A DNA stretch of 63,342 nucleotides, the filler included, from Octopus bimaculoides (Eukaryota), in assembly GCF_001194135.2 (NCBI RefSeq). It is 8 parts of 7 records of this genome, joined end to end, with 100 filler letters (N's around TTAATTAATTAA, not from the genome) between each part and the next. Parts side by side here need not be neighbours in the genome. Positions count along the whole stretch, not along the records: positions 25,747 to 39,014 come from NC_068981.1; 7 more parts are not named here. One strand, 5' to 3'. This document shows positions 27,246-39,014 of this stretch, one piece after another. Every line of letters starts with the position of its first letter. The first letter of the stretch is position 1. The notes beneath the pieces are model-generated. The model made no database searches. It saw nothing but the letters and a program-made list of their open reading frames with translations, and was not told the DNA's origin. The translations under genes and the position numbers were made by a program.

Positions 27246-27789
27246 TATATATGTATGTGTATACATACATATATGTGATGGAAGCATGGTTGTATGGTTG
27301 AGAAATTTGCTTCATAATCATATGGTTTCTGTTTCAGTCCCACTCCGTGGCACTTTGAGTATGTCTTCTATTATAGCCATAGGCTGATTAAAGAATTATT
27401 AATGGATTTAGTGGTTGAAGACTAAAAGAAGCCAGCTATGTATTATATATAGATATGTGTGTGTATGTGTGTGTGTGTGTGCAGGCGTTTTTGTTTAGAT
27501 TTCTGCTTCTTTGAAAATTACTGAACTATAAGCTGTGGAGTTGTCATTTTCCCTCTAAACAAATCAACTTCAGGCTTTGTGCCTTCAGAGACCTGTTGAA
27601 TAAAGGATGAGTTATTTGAAAAACAAGAATGTATTAGTGACAGGAAAGGCATCCATCTGTAAAACAATGTCTCAACAATAGATTCATCTAACCCATATTC
27701 ATTATCATCATCATCATCATCATCGTCATCGTCATCGTCATCATCATCATCATCATCATCATCATCGTCATCGTCATCATTATCATCAT

Positions 27790-28110
27790 CATCAACATCA
27801 TCAACATCATGGTTTAACATCCGTTTTCTATGCTGGCATGGGTTTGACGGTTTGACTGAGGTCTGGAGAGCCAGCAGCTGCACCAGGCTCCAATCTATCT
27901 AGCAATGTTTCTACAGCTGGATTCCCTTTCTAACGCCAACCACTCTGAGAGTGTAGTGGGTGCTTTTTACATGCCACTGGCACAAGGTGCTTATTACATG
28001 CCACTAGCACTTTGATCACATTCAGATAGTGCTTTTTATATGTCGCTGGCATGGGGGCCTGTCAGGGAGTTCTGGTATTGACCACGTTCGATGGTGCTTT
28101 TTACGTGACA
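27790..28110 (-). mobile_element. RTE 3' UTR fragment with (GAT)n tail
   Basis: Reverse copy of the 56140-56510 tail; expanded (CAT)n at about 27703-27810. Confidence 0.75.
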
Positions 28111-28149
28111 TGCACACAGACAAAAACATATGATAATAATGATATATAT

Positions 28150-28790
28150 ATATATATCAAAACTGGGTATACGAGGCATCAGATGTAGCATGCACTGGTA
28201 TGGTCATGTAATGCATAAGAATTAAGACAGTTACATCATGAGATACTGAACTCTAATTGTAGAGGGAACATGTGCAAGGGGCAAACCCAGGAAAATGTGG
28301 GACGAAGTGGTGAGAAAGGATCTACAAATTTTAGGACTCACAGAGGGGATAACAGGGGACCAAGACTCTTGGGAGTTTGCTGTGGTTGAATAGACACATT
28401 AAGCTAAGTAATAGCATAGTTGTCCTTGCATACAGGCTTGTCCCCCGCATTATTCTCCAGCTGAGCATTTCTAACCTTGCAGGCTCATAGGTGCTGGTGC
28501 TATGTAAAAAGAATCCTTACTGGTGCCATGTAAATACACCTATGCTGGTGCTGTGTAAAAGGATCCAGTACGCTCTGTAAAATGGTTGGTGTTAGGAAGG
28601 ATATTGAGCTATAGAAATCATGCCAAAACAGACATGGAGCCTGGGCAGGCATTGAGACATAGAAATCATGCCAAAACAGACACAGGATCTGGGTAGATCT
28701 TCAGTTGAACAGCTCCTATCAAACTGTCCAAACTATGCCAACATGGAAAATGGATTTTAAATGATGATGAAGAGGATAATTTATCTATAT
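28150..28790 (+). mobile_element. RTE-type LINE 3' end (older)
   Basis: WYGHVM...EGTCARGKPRKMWDEVVRKDL and the shared 3' UTR. Confidence 0.75.
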
Positions 28791-28952
28791 ATGTATGAAT
28801 AAGGCAGCAAGCTGGCAGAATCATTGGCATGCAGGGCAAAATGTTTAGAGCCATTTCATCTGTCATAAGAGAAAAATTTATTAATTTTTCACTTTAAATA
28901 TATTTATTTATATTAAGGGCATTACAATACATAAATGTAAATAAATAAATGA

Positions 28953-28995
<43 letters not shown>

Positions 28996-29089
28996 TTTAA
29001 GTTCGCTTACGGGAGTAAGTTTTATGGGGTTCTGCTGAGCTGTGCCATTATAATGTAGGATACACATGGTGATAATAATAATAATAATG

Positions 29090-29356
29090 ATCCATGAATG
29101 GAATTTATAAATATTTTAATACATCACTGTGCATGTTTCCACAAGTTATGTGTTTCTGATGCTGATAGTCTGTATTCCTGTGATGATTACAGTACAATCT
29201 GTAATATCAATGGATATCAGGTGGATCTTACTCCATGGATATTACAGATTGTACTGTAATCACCTCAGGAATATGGACTATGATCATAAGAAACATGCAG
29301 CTTGTGGAAACATGTGTAGTGATGCATCAGAATATTTATAAATTCCATCCATGGAT
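29090..29356. repeat. Long gap-free inverted repeat (125-bp arms, 17-nt loop) inside (AAT)n/(ATT)n
   Basis: 29090-29214 vs reverse complement of 29232-29356: 106/125 identical, no indels. Confidence 0.95.
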
Positions 29357-29378
29357 TATTATTATTATTATTATTATT

Positions 29379-29414
<36 letters not shown>

Positions 29415-30240
29415 ATTATTATATTTTTATTATTATTATTATTATTTCTATCTGTATATAATGGGCTTCAAGTACCATACAGTGGAACTATATCCCAAAC
29501 CATGAGGGGTTGAAACTGAATTTCTTAATCACACTGCCTTTCCTGTGCCTATATGTGTGTATATGTGTGTGTGTATGTTTGATTGTGTGCATGTGTGTGT
29601 GATTGCATGTCTGATTGTGTGTGAGTGTGAGTGTGTGTGTATTCACTAGATTATTTCCATTTGAATTTTGTCTTCTTTTCATGTTATTTTACTTTCAGTA
29701 CAAGTGTGAAATTGATTATTTAGGCACATTTTACTAATTTTGTTAATTGTCTTTTACTTACTATTTTGTTTTAGGTTTGTTAAGAATAGGTTGATGGAAA
29801 GTAACATTCACATTTATAAACATAGAAGAAACATTTCTTTGCACAACTGTGATTCAACTTGGCATGTTATCATTTCTAAAAATGAGGCAGAACAATCAAA
29901 ATTTATAAAATTTAAATATACTTCTAATTTAATTAAAAATCAACAATTCAAACAGCCAAATGTCTGTGTAAGAATTTGAGCAACATTTATTTGTATAACA
30001 AAATTTGTCTATTAGCAGGAAGTAGTCTTTGGTGTGATGTATAGCATAAGATTCAGAGCAAAATGTGGGTGAGATAACAATTTATGTTTGGATTGCATTC
30101 CAATTTTCTGTTTGTAATTCAAGAAAGGCTACCTGTGAATGTTATTTTTGTATGTGAGATTCTTTGAGATGTGATACTAAGAACCAACAGTTAAGATAGG
30201 CCTATGTGAGTTTAATAATGTCAATATTTAAAGTTAAGTA

Positions 30241-30552: not shown

Positions 30553-31198
30553 AGTTCTATATTTAAGAGATGAGGAATTATGTACATTATTCACATTATT
30601 TACAATTGACGGATATTTGTCCACATCTTGTTTGTTGTTGACACAAGGTTTCAGCTGATATACCCTCCAGCCTTCATCAGTTCTCATTCCTAAGGTATTT
30701 TTCGATGTTGTTGTTGTTATTATTATTATTGTTCAGTAGTTTTATTTTTATAACGTGTTTTCACTTCACTACCGAGCGCAGCTCTGTGTGCCTTGGGTAT
30801 GTGCTGTGGTTTGCTGTGATGCTCCTTTGGTTACTGTATTGAAAGTGTTTTGCATAGGATGTGTGCAGTTCCCAGTAGTGCAATTTTCTGTATGTTATAT
30901 ATATTTGTAAGTCCTGGTGTTTTTGTTATGTATTTGTCTGAATATTTTTTTATTATACCTAAGGCACCTACTATGATAGGAATTGTTTCTGTTTTTAGAT
31001 TCCACATTCGTGTTACCTCTATTTCCAGGTTTTTGTATTTTGAAAGTTTTTCCATTTCTTTTAGGGAAACGTTGTCATCTGCTGGTATTGATACATCAAT
31101 TAGAAAGCATTGTTTTTTCTCTATTATCATTATTATTATTATTCAAGTCACTGCCTGGAATTGAACTCGGAATCATGGGGTTAGTAGTCTGCACTCTT
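30553..31198 (-). mobile_element. tRNA-head/(AAT)n/hammerhead SINE-like element, left copy (interrupted by Dong)
   Basis: Head GGTTAAGAGTGCAGACTACTAACCCCATGATTCCGAGTTCAATTCC, then (AAT)n with a Dong insert, then ATCGAAAAATACCTTAGGAATGAGAA-CTGATGA...GAAA (hammerhead copy B at 30640-30685). Confidence 0.75.
30731..31122 (-). mobile_element. 5'-truncated Dong/R4 copy nested in the (AAT)n linker of the left SINE-like element
   Basis: CFLIDVSIPADDNVSLKEMEKLSKYKNLEIEVTRMWNLKTETIPIIVGALG (REL); same 3' end as 16447; (AAT)n on both sides. Confidence 0.9.
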
Positions 31199-31233
31199 AA
31201 CCCCATGATTCTAAGTTCGATTCCAAGCAGTGA

Positions 31234-31280
<47 letters not shown>

Positions 31281-31425
31281 GCAACAACAACATCGAAAAA
31301 TACCTTAGAAATGAGAACCCAGGTTCGAATTTTCCCCAAGACATCTGATGAAGGATGGAGGGTATATCAGCCGAAATGTGTTAGCAACAAAGAAGATATC
31401 CGTCAATTGTAAATAATGTACAATA
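31196..31425 (+). mobile_element. tRNA-head/(AAT)n/hammerhead SINE-like element, right copy
   Basis: TAACCCCATGATTCTAAGTTCGATTCC (box B), (AAT)n at 31238-31280, body, and hammerhead copy C GACAT-CTGATGA-A-GGATG..CAGCC-GAAA-TGTGTT at 31340-31382. Confidence 0.75.
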
Positions 31426-35877: not shown

Positions 35878-36015
35878 NNNNNNNNNNNNNNNNNNNNNNN
35901 NNNNNNNNNNNNNNNNNNNNNNNNNNNNNNNNNNNNNNNNNNNNNNNNNNNNNNNNNNNNNNNNNNNNNNNNNNNNNNNNNNNNNNNNNNNNNNNNNNNN
36001 NNNNNNNNNNNNNNN

Positions 36016-38749: not shown

Positions 38750-39014
38750 GTCGTCGTCGTTTAACATCCGATTTCCATGCTAGCATGGGTTGGACGATTT
38801 GACTGAGTACTGGTGAAACCAGATGGCTACACCAGGCTCCAATCTGATTTGGCAGAGTTTCTACAGCTGGATGTCCTTCCTAACGCCAACCACTCAGAGA
38901 GTGTAGTGGGTGCTTTTACGTGTCACCTGCACGAAGGCCAGTCAGGCGGTACTGGCAACGGCTACGCTCAAAATGGTGCATTTCATGTGCCACCCGCACA
39001 AAAAAGAAAACAAA
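38750..39014 (-). mobile_element. RTE 3' UTR fragment
   Basis: Reverse copy of the 52260-52490 tail. Confidence 0.75.

What the first reader, a model, noticed from the sequence alone, without database searches (positions are those of the whole stretch)
29072..29374. Unexplained long, indel-free hairpin (125-bp arms, 17-nt loop) embedded in complementary (AAT)n/(ATT)n
Seen: 106/125 identity with no gaps. Of 19 mismatches, 9 would be G-U pairs in + strand RNA, 5 would be A-C (editable by ADAR, or G-U on the minus strand) and 5 are transversions. The flanking SSRs extend the stem by about 18 bp. Each arm begins and ends with a TCCATGGA-like palindrome. It matches no other repeat in the window and has no obvious TIR/TSD signature. 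Three TG/CA pairs also fit neutral CpG decay of a palindromic MITE, so selection on structure is not established. Candidates: hpRNA/endo-siRNA or miRNA source, ADAR substrate (coleoids edit heavily), or an unclassified fold-back element.
Basis: partly seen in the sequence, partly recalled or inferred. Interest (0 to 1): 0.7.

Follow-up and report, generated by a model that had tools for sequence, protein, structure and literature searches.

The report
Decaying fold-back palindrome in octopus repeat DNA
The long hairpin is real, but it looks like an old inverted duplication of a short non-coding repeat in an octopus genome already known to be full of such structures, and nothing shows it is a small-RNA gene.

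Summary
Arms 29072-29214 and 29232-29374 (143 nt) are 86% complementary with no indel around a 17-nt loop. The 125-nt core matches at 106/125, and 15 of its 19 mismatches are transitions. RNA folds of both strands lie about 25 sd below shuffles.

The element has no CpG (7.6 expected) and an excess of TG/CA. G.U-compatible mismatches do not favour either strand significantly (10 vs 5, p=0.30). No Rfam family is reached and no TSD exceeds chance.

The only homologue found anywhere is a single, non-palindromic, non-coding copy of the arm on a Logan contig. It is 76% identical over 88 nt and still has CpGs where the two arms now carry mismatched TG/CA. Each arm is bounded by the self-complementary octamer TCCATGGA. 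Two further palindromes ending in trinucleotide repeats, built from other sequences, lie within 2 kb.

Published work reports that molluscs lack a dedicated siRNA pathway and extended miRNA hairpins, and that Octopus bimaculoides is exceptionally rich in long dsRNA-forming loci.

Best reading: a roughly 20-25 My old fold-back inverted duplication, decaying neutrally. At most it is a generic ADAR substrate if transcribed. Genomic copy number and expression could not be tested here.

The parts
29072..29089 (.). Left simple repeat, (AAT)n read as ATAATAAT...G. It forms the outermost 18 bp of the stem.
   Evidence: 17 matches and one G.T against 29357-29374
29090..29214 (.). Left arm core (125 nt). 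By comparison with the outside copy it is the more derived arm and carries all 5 transversions.
29091..29098 (.). Outer octamer of the left arm, TCCATGAA (TCCATGGA with one mismatch)
29116..29183 (.). Middle of the stem, holding 17 of the 20 mismatches (25% mismatched, against 4% elsewhere)
   Evidence: permutation p=0.004; p=0.04 after allowing for G+C
29184..29262 (.). Apical part: 25 perfect bp, an A.G mismatch, 5 bp and the 17-nt loop. This is the only part that draws miRNA-model hits, all below threshold.
29207..29214 (.). Inner octamer of the left arm, TCAATGGA (one mismatch)
29215..29231 (.). 17-nt spacer/loop, TATCAGGTGGATCTTAC
29232..29239 (.). Inner octamer of the right arm, TCCATGGA (exact, self-complementary)
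29232..29356 (.). Right arm core (125 nt). It is the closer arm to the outside homologue: 76% over 29233-29320.
29348..29355 (.). Outer octamer of the right arm, TCCATGGA (exact)
29355..29450 (.). Right simple-repeat block: (ATT)9 (GTT)12 (ATT)3 ATATTTTT (ATT)6. Only its first 18-20 nt pair with the left repeat; the rest lies on the right side only.
   Evidence: D2, D3

Best explanation
The feature is a non-coding fold-back palindrome. A unit of about 125 nt from repeat-type DNA, together with the start of an adjoining AAT/ATT simple repeat, was copied once in inverted orientation next to itself, leaving a 17-nt spacer.

Inferred mechanism: snap-back (hairpin-primed) synthesis or a strand switch. 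A nascent strand ending in the self-complementary octamer TCCATGGA paired with the neighbouring copy of that octamer and copied its own strand back out to the simple repeat, where it rejoined. Whether a DNA polymerase at a fork or break did this, or a reverse transcriptase during retroposition, is open.

Since then the two arms have drifted apart without constraint. They are 15% different. All CpGs have decayed to TG/CA. The right-hand simple repeat has expanded.

Shown: the anatomy, the decay pattern, a non-palindromic relative, and the nearby analogues. Inferred: the formation mechanism, single-copy status and lack of function.

If the locus lies inside a transcript, the RNA would fold into about 143 bp of dsRNA and would be expected to be hyper-edited by ADAR. 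That is a by-product shared with many other octopus inverted repeats, not a selected function.
For: Anatomy and stability.

Neutral decay: 0 CpG against 7.6 expected, TG 30 against 17.3 expected, CA 22 against 13.0 expected, and three TG/CA doublets. Transitions to transversions are 15:5. Wobble pairs are 10 on + and 5 on -, p=0.30.

Outside homologue: HMMER over 1.84 billion representatives gave one credible hit, P0023. It lies on Logan contigs L003/L004. L003 1597-1684 matches the right arm 29233-29320 at 76% without gaps (E 1e-13) and the left arm at 70%. That copy is not palindromic: no inverted repeat, and a DNA fold z of +2.5. It is non-coding: the 21 differences fall 7/7/7 over codon positions. 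It reads ACGCGCGT where the arms read ACATGTGT and ACATGCAC, so one mismatch cluster is directly explained by independent CpG decay.

Octamer: TCCATGGA bounds each arm at both ends and is rare in the piece.

A process rather than one family: within 2 kb, 31122-31259 (67-nt arms, 88%) and 30593-30733/31265-31419 are further inverted repeats with AAT/ATT/GTT repeats at the arm ends. They are built from unrelated sequences.

No TSD and no extension beyond the simple repeats.

Background: octopus has an exceptionally high fraction of loci able to form long, near-perfect dsRNA (4.4e-3 of random 50-mers) and the strongest hyper-editing signal (PMC5625713). About 66% of the O. vulgaris genome is repeats (PMC13282606).
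Against: Genomic copy number could not be measured, because no octopus assembly is searchable with these tools. 'Local and single-copy' is therefore an inference.

The organism behind L003 (SRR11869390/91) is unknown. L003 could be a solo arm of an element that is normally palindromic.

Mismatches are clustered: 17 in the middle 68 bp against 3 in the other 75. This is only partly explained by base composition. It could reflect constraint on, or homogenisation of, the apical 31 bp and the base.

Polarised against L003, the left arm carries all 5 transversions and the right arm none. Simple symmetric drift does not predict that, although the numbers are small.

The octamer-primed snap-back step has no direct support beyond the anatomy.
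Confidence: 0.5

Rival explanations
1. It is one copy of a dispersed, mobile fold-back element or long-TIR MITE. The terminal inverted repeats make up nearly the whole element, and a transposase encoded elsewhere moves it.
For: It is small, non-coding and almost entirely palindromic. A related sequence exists at an unlinked place, so the arm belongs to some repeat family. Octopus genomes carry many TIR and MITE families. The TIR/Helitron expansion is dated at JC 0.09 (PMC13282606), which matches the per-arm distance of about 0.085 that I calculate from 19/125. A palindromic Harbinger repeat is a major dsRNA source in frog (PMC5625713).
Against: No TSD exceeds chance. The ends are simple repeats rather than a recognisable TIR terminus. 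The only homologue found is not palindromic and has no inverted partner within 2.1 kb. No further copy turned up in the 13-kb piece or in any collection searched, though those searches have little power for octopus DNA.
Confidence: 0.3
2. It is a long-hairpin RNA gene: either an hpRNA-like source of endogenous siRNAs or a young, unusually long miRNA precursor whose apical 31-bp stem is diced.
For: The RNA hairpin is very stable on both strands. The apical 25 bp are perfect, and the apical 31-bp stem with a 17-nt loop has roughly pri-miRNA proportions. Mismatches avoid the apex and the base. There are twice as many G.U pairs on + as on -. Generic miRNA covariance models hit 29172-29272.
Against: The Rfam hits are far below gathering scores (44.6 against 100, 35.6 against 54) and occur on both strands, as expected for any hairpin. 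Molluscs, including O. bimaculoides, lack siRNA-class Dicer and Ago and show no endo-siRNA read signature (PMC12479628, PMC11114477). Molluscs appear to lack extended miRNA hairpins (PMC12553114). The stem has no single-stranded basal junction about 35 bp from the loop. The strand bias is not significant (p=0.30). Complete CpG loss and TG/CA doublets fit drift. No expression, conservation or target data are available.
Confidence: 0.06
3. It is kept because it is a dsRNA substrate for ADAR, for example as an editing sponge or regulator, or as an edited structural element of a host transcript.
For: 143 bp of near-perfect dsRNA is the preferred ADAR substrate. Octopus shows the strongest hyper-editing signal among the animals surveyed, mostly in repeats that form such structures (PMC5625713).
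Against: The same paper implies that such structures are extremely common in octopus, so being a substrate does not imply selection. There is no sign of a host gene in the 13-kb piece: ORFs are low-complexity or TE-derived. The decay pattern is neutral. Transcription is unknown.
Confidence: 0.04
4. It is an assembly or library artefact, such as a missed-adapter palindromic long read or a chimeric amplification product.
For: Artefactual palindromes with short spacers do occur in long-read and amplified libraries (my own knowledge).
Against: The arms differ at 20 of 143 positions, all substitutions with a 3:1 transition bias and CpG-decay doublets, and there are no indels. Artefacts give near-identical arms with indel-type errors. 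The arms are short and end in genuine, unequal simple repeats.
Confidence: 0.01

Closest known systems
Fold-back inversions / inverted duplications formed by hairpin-primed (snap-back) synthesis or template switching (yeast and human examples: PMC7467729, PMC3907307, seen as titles and abstracts)
   Same: Two inverted copies separated by a short spacer. There is a short self-complementary sequence at the centre (TCCATGGA on either side of 17 nt) that could prime fold-back. A non-palindromic relative of the duplicated unit exists.
   Different: The scale is about 0.3 kb, not kilobases to megabases. There is no chromosome-end or amplification context. The outer junctions lie in simple repeats. 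The event is old and fixed. The mechanism is inferred from anatomy only.
MITEs and fold-back transposons, e.g. the palindromic Harbinger-derived repeat of Xenopus mentioned in PMC5625713
   Same: Short, non-coding, almost wholly palindromic, AT-rich, able to form dsRNA when transcribed.
   Different: No target-site duplication. No recognisable terminal motif, because the ends are simple repeats. No second palindromic copy was found, and the one relative found is a single non-palindromic arm.
Drosophila hpRNA loci (e.g. hp-mir-997-1, discussed in PMC12553114)
   Same: A long inverted repeat giving a stem of a hundred or more base pairs with a small loop.
   Different: hpRNAs depend on Dicer-2, Loqs-PD and AGO2, a pathway reported absent from molluscs. 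They have identifiable target genes and abundant 21-nt reads. None of this is shown here.
Inverted SINE/Alu pairs as promiscuous ADAR hyper-editing substrates (PMC5625713)
   Same: Repeat-derived, long, near-perfect dsRNA potential. The expected consequence is clustered A-to-I editing if transcribed.
   Different: Here a single tight palindrome (17-nt loop) replaces two separate insertions. Transcription and editing are untested.

Membership tests
MITE / fold-back DNA transposon | Terminal inverted repeats | tested here: met
   The whole element is an inverted repeat. However, the termini are simple repeats with no superfamily-type end motif.
MITE / fold-back DNA transposon | Target-site duplication directly flanking the element | tested here: not met
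   Systematic scan of all plausible boundaries: the best is a 7-mer, TATAATG, at 29049-29055 / 29457-29463, and 65% of shuffles do as well. The simple-repeat ends blur the boundaries, so the test is weak.
MITE / fold-back DNA transposon | Many dispersed copies of the same palindromic unit | tested here: inconclusive
   None in the 13-kb piece. One non-palindromic relative in public data. No octopus genome is searchable here.
MITE / fold-back DNA transposon | Short (<~800 bp) and non-coding | tested here: met
   About 303 bp. ORFs of at most 92 aa had no homologues apart from the arm copy. Differences to the relative fall 7/7/7 over codon positions.
hpRNA / endo-siRNA locus | Long inverted-repeat hairpin transcript | tested here: inconclusive
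   The hairpin potential is shown. Transcription is not testable.
hpRNA / endo-siRNA locus | Host has a dedicated siRNA pathway (siRNA-class Dicer and Ago) | tested here: not met
   From literature, not from this sequence: absent in molluscs including O. bimaculoides (PMC12479628, PMC11114477).
hpRNA / endo-siRNA locus | Phased ~21-nt duplex reads and a complementary target mRNA | not testable with these tools
   No small-RNA data or transcriptome is available.
Canonical miRNA precursor | ~35-bp stem with single-stranded basal flanks and a terminal loop | tested here: not met
   The stem is continuous for 143 bp. Below the apical 31 bp there is only a small internal loop at 29181-29183.
Canonical miRNA precursor | Match to a described family at its curated score | tested here: not met
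   Best Rfam hits are MIR7994 at 44.6 bits (gathering score 100) and mir-374 at 35.6 (gathering score 54), on both strands.
ADAR hyper-editing substrate | Long, nearly perfect intramolecular dsRNA | tested here: met
   143 bp, 86% Watson-Crick and 93% paired counting G.U on the + strand.
ADAR hyper-editing substrate | Transcribed, with clustered A-to-G RNA/DNA differences | not testable with these tools
   No RNA-seq access.
Fold-back (snap-back) inverted duplication | Short inverted repeat around the spacer that can prime fold-back | tested here: met
   TCAATGGA, 17 nt, TCCATGGA at 29207-29239. The octamer is self-complementary and rare.
Fold-back (snap-back) inverted duplication | Progenitor sequence exists in non-palindromic form | tested here: inconclusive
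   L003 1597-1684 is a single-arm relative without any inverted repeat. It is not the orthologous locus, and its organism is unknown.
Fold-back (snap-back) inverted duplication | Sister taxa or haplotypes carrying the single-arm (pre-duplication) state at the same locus | not testable with these tools
   No related octopod assemblies are reachable.

The most novel reading that the evidence does not exclude
The hairpin is transcribed and is a functional long-hairpin RNA locus in a clade thought to lack endogenous siRNAs. Its nearly perfect apical stem would be processed by the miRNA-class Dicer/Ago, or the duplex would serve as a selected ADAR target. A related reading: palindromes bounded by simple repeats, like this one and its two neighbours, are made recurrently by a snap-back step during retroposition, and this process feeds the exceptional dsRNA and editing load of octopus.
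Probability: 0.06. Interest if true: 0.7.

Novelty: new member of a known kind. Interest (0 to 1): 0.22.

Why it matters
As it stands, this is one more long inverted repeat in a genome reported to be unusually rich in them, so it matters little by itself.

Two aspects could be worth a genome-wide look. First, three palindromes within 2.4 kb all end in AAT/ATT-type trinucleotide repeats, and the one studied here is bounded by a self-complementary octamer. If that architecture is common, it would point to a specific, recurrent way of making hairpins in octopus DNA. It would also help explain why octopus has so many dsRNA-forming loci and so much hyper-editing.

Second, such structures are the usual raw material for new miRNA genes, and coleoids have gained many of those. 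Neither point is established by this single locus.

Tried and rejected
1. Copies elsewhere:
- Exact 23-mer and degenerate 27-mer scans of JGI metagenome contigs and IMG/VR gave 0 hits.
- Exact look-ups of hairpin ORFs gave 0.
- A word-indexed protein search with the hairpin frame gave 0.
- A profile of the three arm translations returned only P0023 itself.
- These collections hold almost no octopus DNA, so the negatives say little about copy number.

2. Sampling the octopus genome through a neighbouring retroelement ORF:
- The best long contig (L001, 3.6 Mb, ENA ERZ25066855) is another organism; only the TE matches, at 70%.
- The octopus-like hits sit on contigs under 1.3 kb.
- The idea was dropped.

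3. Two of the three HMMER hits (P0021, P0022) are tandem-repeat proteins that score through many weak stretches. I rejected them as spurious.

4. Identifying SRR11869390 from the literature found only an unrelated accession. The cluster look-up gave no names.

5. Extension of the palindrome beyond the simple repeats is not significant.

6. Homology of the 17-nt loop to L003 in one orientation: both orientations align about equally, so it does not show which arm is the original.

7. Searching paper texts for stem sequences (DNA and RNA spelling) gave 0 hits.

8. ARAGORN found no tRNA gene in the piece.

9. A six-frame Pfam scan of the neighbourhood was prepared but not run, because it would not bear on the hairpin.

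Full report
**1. Is it there?**

Yes. The repeat finder lists one outstanding inverted repeat in the piece: arms 29072-29214 and 29232-29374, 143 nt, 86% complementary, 17 nt apart (I1, I1).
- Counting base by base gives 20 mismatches and no indel.
Its mismatches are 9 G.U(+), 5 A.C(+) and 5 transversions, exactly as reported.
- As RNA, the + strand folds at -180.1 kcal/mol (shuffles -72.1 +/- 4.3, z -25) and the - strand at -167 (z -27).
- The octamer TCCATGGA, which is its own reverse complement, sits at both ends of both arms. It is exact at 29232-29239 and 29348-29355, and has one mismatch at 29091-29098 and 29207-29214. Only three exact copies exist in the whole source, against 0.24 expected.
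- The substitution-only divergence of the arms excludes an assembly or adapter artefact.

**2. Where is it?**

The piece is AT-rich (33% G+C, CpG observed/expected 0.35) and is mostly simple repeats and decayed interspersed repeats. No ORF looks like a host gene.

A 99-aa ORF at 30831-31130(-) has an 'Uncharacterized protein, Octopus bimaculoides' as its best named relative, at 89% identity. From memory I also recognise the abundant octopus SINE at 28795-28865.

**3. Does the mismatch pattern show selection for structure?**

No.
- The 269-nt element has no CpG at all (7.6 expected). TG (30 against 17.3) and CA (22 against 13.0) are in excess.
- Three mismatch doublets are TG in one arm against CA in the other, which is the signature of independent deamination of an ancestral CpG.
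- Transitions outnumber transversions 15:5.
- Every transition mismatch in a hairpin is a G.U on one strand or the other. The split is 10 (+) to 5 (-), p=0.30.
- One feature is not fully explained. Seventeen mismatches fall in the middle 68 bp (29116-29183) and only three in the other 75 bp (permutation p=0.004). Counting only columns that are or were G/C gives p=0.04.
- Composition and CpG hot spots explain part of this clustering. Local homogenisation or constraint on the apical 31 bp cannot be excluded.

**4. Relatives**

Nothing else in the piece resembles the arms. DNA-pattern scans of metagenome and viral collections and word-indexed protein searches were empty.

A full HMMER scan of 1.84 billion representative proteins, using the open frame that runs through the hairpin, gave one believable hit, P0023 (51 aa, E 9e-4). 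The other two hits are tandem-repeat proteins.

P0023 is encoded on identical 2.16-kb Logan contigs from SRR11869390 and SRR11869391 (L003, L004).
- At the DNA level, L003 1597-1684 matches the right arm 29233-29320 at 76% with no gap (E 1e-13) and the left arm at 70%. With gaps, the similarity runs over nearly the whole arm.
- The 21 differences are spread 7/7/7 over codon positions, so this is non-coding homology.
- L003 has no inverted repeat there, and its DNA fold is weaker than shuffles.
- Its flanks are unrelated to the window, so it is not the orthologous locus.
- L003 reads ACGCGCGT where the right arm reads ACATGTGT and the left arm (reverse complement) reads ACATGCAC. The mismatch cluster at 29129-29131 is therefore CpG decay caught in the act.
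- Polarising with L003, the left arm has 10 derived changes (5 of them transversions) and the right arm 7 (none a transversion). The numbers are small and the outgroup is distant.
- I could not identify the organism behind these runs.

**5. Neighbouring analogues**

Within 2.4 kb downstream of the finding there are two more inverted repeats with trinucleotide repeats at their arm ends. Both are built from different sequences.
- The first is 31122-31259: 67-nt arms, 88% complementary, 4-nt gap. Its flanks are (ATT)5 on the left and (AAT)15 AGC (AAC)3 on the right, and its core looks like a tRNA T-arm.
- The second is 30593-30733 against 31265-31419, with (GTT)4(ATT)4 and its complement at the inner ends. 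It encloses the retroelement-like ORF.

Palindromes bounded by simple repeats therefore look like a recurring product in this genome, not a peculiarity of one sequence family.

**6. What it most likely is**

I take it to be a fold-back inverted duplication of a roughly 125-nt repeat-derived unit plus the beginning of an adjoining AAT-type simple repeat.

The self-complementary octamer on either side of the 17-nt spacer is what a nascent strand would need in order to snap back and copy itself. The simple repeat offers an easy place to rejoin. This mechanism is an inference from anatomy. It could have happened during DNA replication or repair, or during reverse transcription of a retroposon.

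The core arms differ at 19/125 positions, a Jukes-Cantor distance of 0.17, or about 0.085 per arm. With the calibration quoted for octopus TEs (JC 0.09 about 25 My; PMC13282606), that puts the event very roughly at 20-25 My. The estimate is probably inflated by CpG hypermutability.

The main rival is an ordinary mobile fold-back or MITE family. I cannot exclude it because genomic copy number is untestable here. Against it stand the lack of a TSD, the simple-repeat termini and the non-palindromic relative.

**7. Function**

Surveys of molluscan small-RNA machinery and libraries, which include O. bimaculoides, find miRNA and piRNA pathways but no siRNA-class Dicer or Ago and no endo-siRNA signature (PMC12479628, PMC11114477). 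A survey of giant miRNA hairpins notes that molluscs appear to lack highly extended ones (PMC12553114). Rfam models give only sub-threshold hits on both strands. The hpRNA and miRNA readings are therefore unlikely (about 6% together).

ADAR editing is expected if the locus is transcribed. However, Porath et al. report that 4.4e-3 of random 50-mers in O. bimaculoides lie in long, nearly perfect dsRNA-forming structures, exceptionally high among 19 species (PMC5625713). By my arithmetic, for a genome of about 2.7 Gb (from memory), that is on the order of 10 Mb of such sequence. Being a potential substrate is therefore the rule for such repeats, not evidence of a role.

**8. Verdict**

- It is a new instance of a known kind of thing: a decaying fold-back or inverted-duplication repeat.
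- Interest is low for the locus itself.
- The octamer-bounded, simple-repeat-ended architecture, and its recurrence nearby, is a modest lead that a genome-wide census could test.

Noticed in passing
window 31122-31259: A second tight hairpin: 67-nt arms, 88% complementary, 4-nt gap. Its unique core (31144-31237) contains a tRNA T-arm-like GTTCGATTCC...CAGTGACC. The outer ends are (ATT)5 and (AAT)15 AGC (AAC)3, so this is again an inverted duplication that includes part of an adjoining trinucleotide repeat. ARAGORN calls no tRNA there.
   Followed up: partly
window 30593-30733 and 31265-31419: A long inverted repeat (segments of 54 nt at 94%, 51 nt at 80% and 24 nt at 100%, with a 21-nt indel). 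Its inner ends are (GTT)4(ATT)4 and the complementary (AAT)n(AAC)3. It encloses the hairpin above and a retroelement-like ORF. The same 'repeat + ATCGAAAAATACCTTAG...' unit follows two different upstream sequences.
   Followed up: partly
window 30831-31130 (-): A 99-aa ORF with no Pfam hit. It is 89% identical to an uncharacterised O. bimaculoides protein and 50-80% identical to about 20 ORFs in ENA/JGI contigs, including a 3.6-Mb eukaryotic contig of another organism (ERZ25066855). It is probably the C-terminal part of a widespread non-LTR retroelement protein.
   Followed up: partly
window 27694-28115 and 38754-38937: Two copies (84-89% identical) of an interspersed repeat that begins with a (CAT)n(CGT)n trinucleotide tract. 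This is another case in this piece of a dispersed repeat with a trinucleotide repeat at one end.
   Followed up: no
window 28240-28390 (+): One reading frame gives ...GKPRKMWDEVVRKDLQILGLTEGITGDQDSWEF... From memory this resembles the conserved C-terminal tail of invertebrate non-LTR ORF2 proteins, so it is probably a LINE 3' fragment.
   Followed up: no
window 29116-29183 versus the rest of the stem: Mismatches between the arms are strongly clustered in the middle third of the stem: 17 of 68 positions against 3 of 75. G+C content and CpG sites explain this only partly.
   Followed up: yes
L003 1-2161 (Logan SRR11869390; L004 identical): This contig carries the only outside relative of the arm. 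It has CpG observed/expected of 0.70 against 0.35 in the window, starts in an (ATGT)n repeat and has no recognisable protein domains. Its organism is unknown.
   Followed up: partly
window 35900-36015: A run of N inside the piece (148 N in all) within a TG/ATGT-rich simple-repeat region. It is an assembly gap, not sequence.
   Followed up: no
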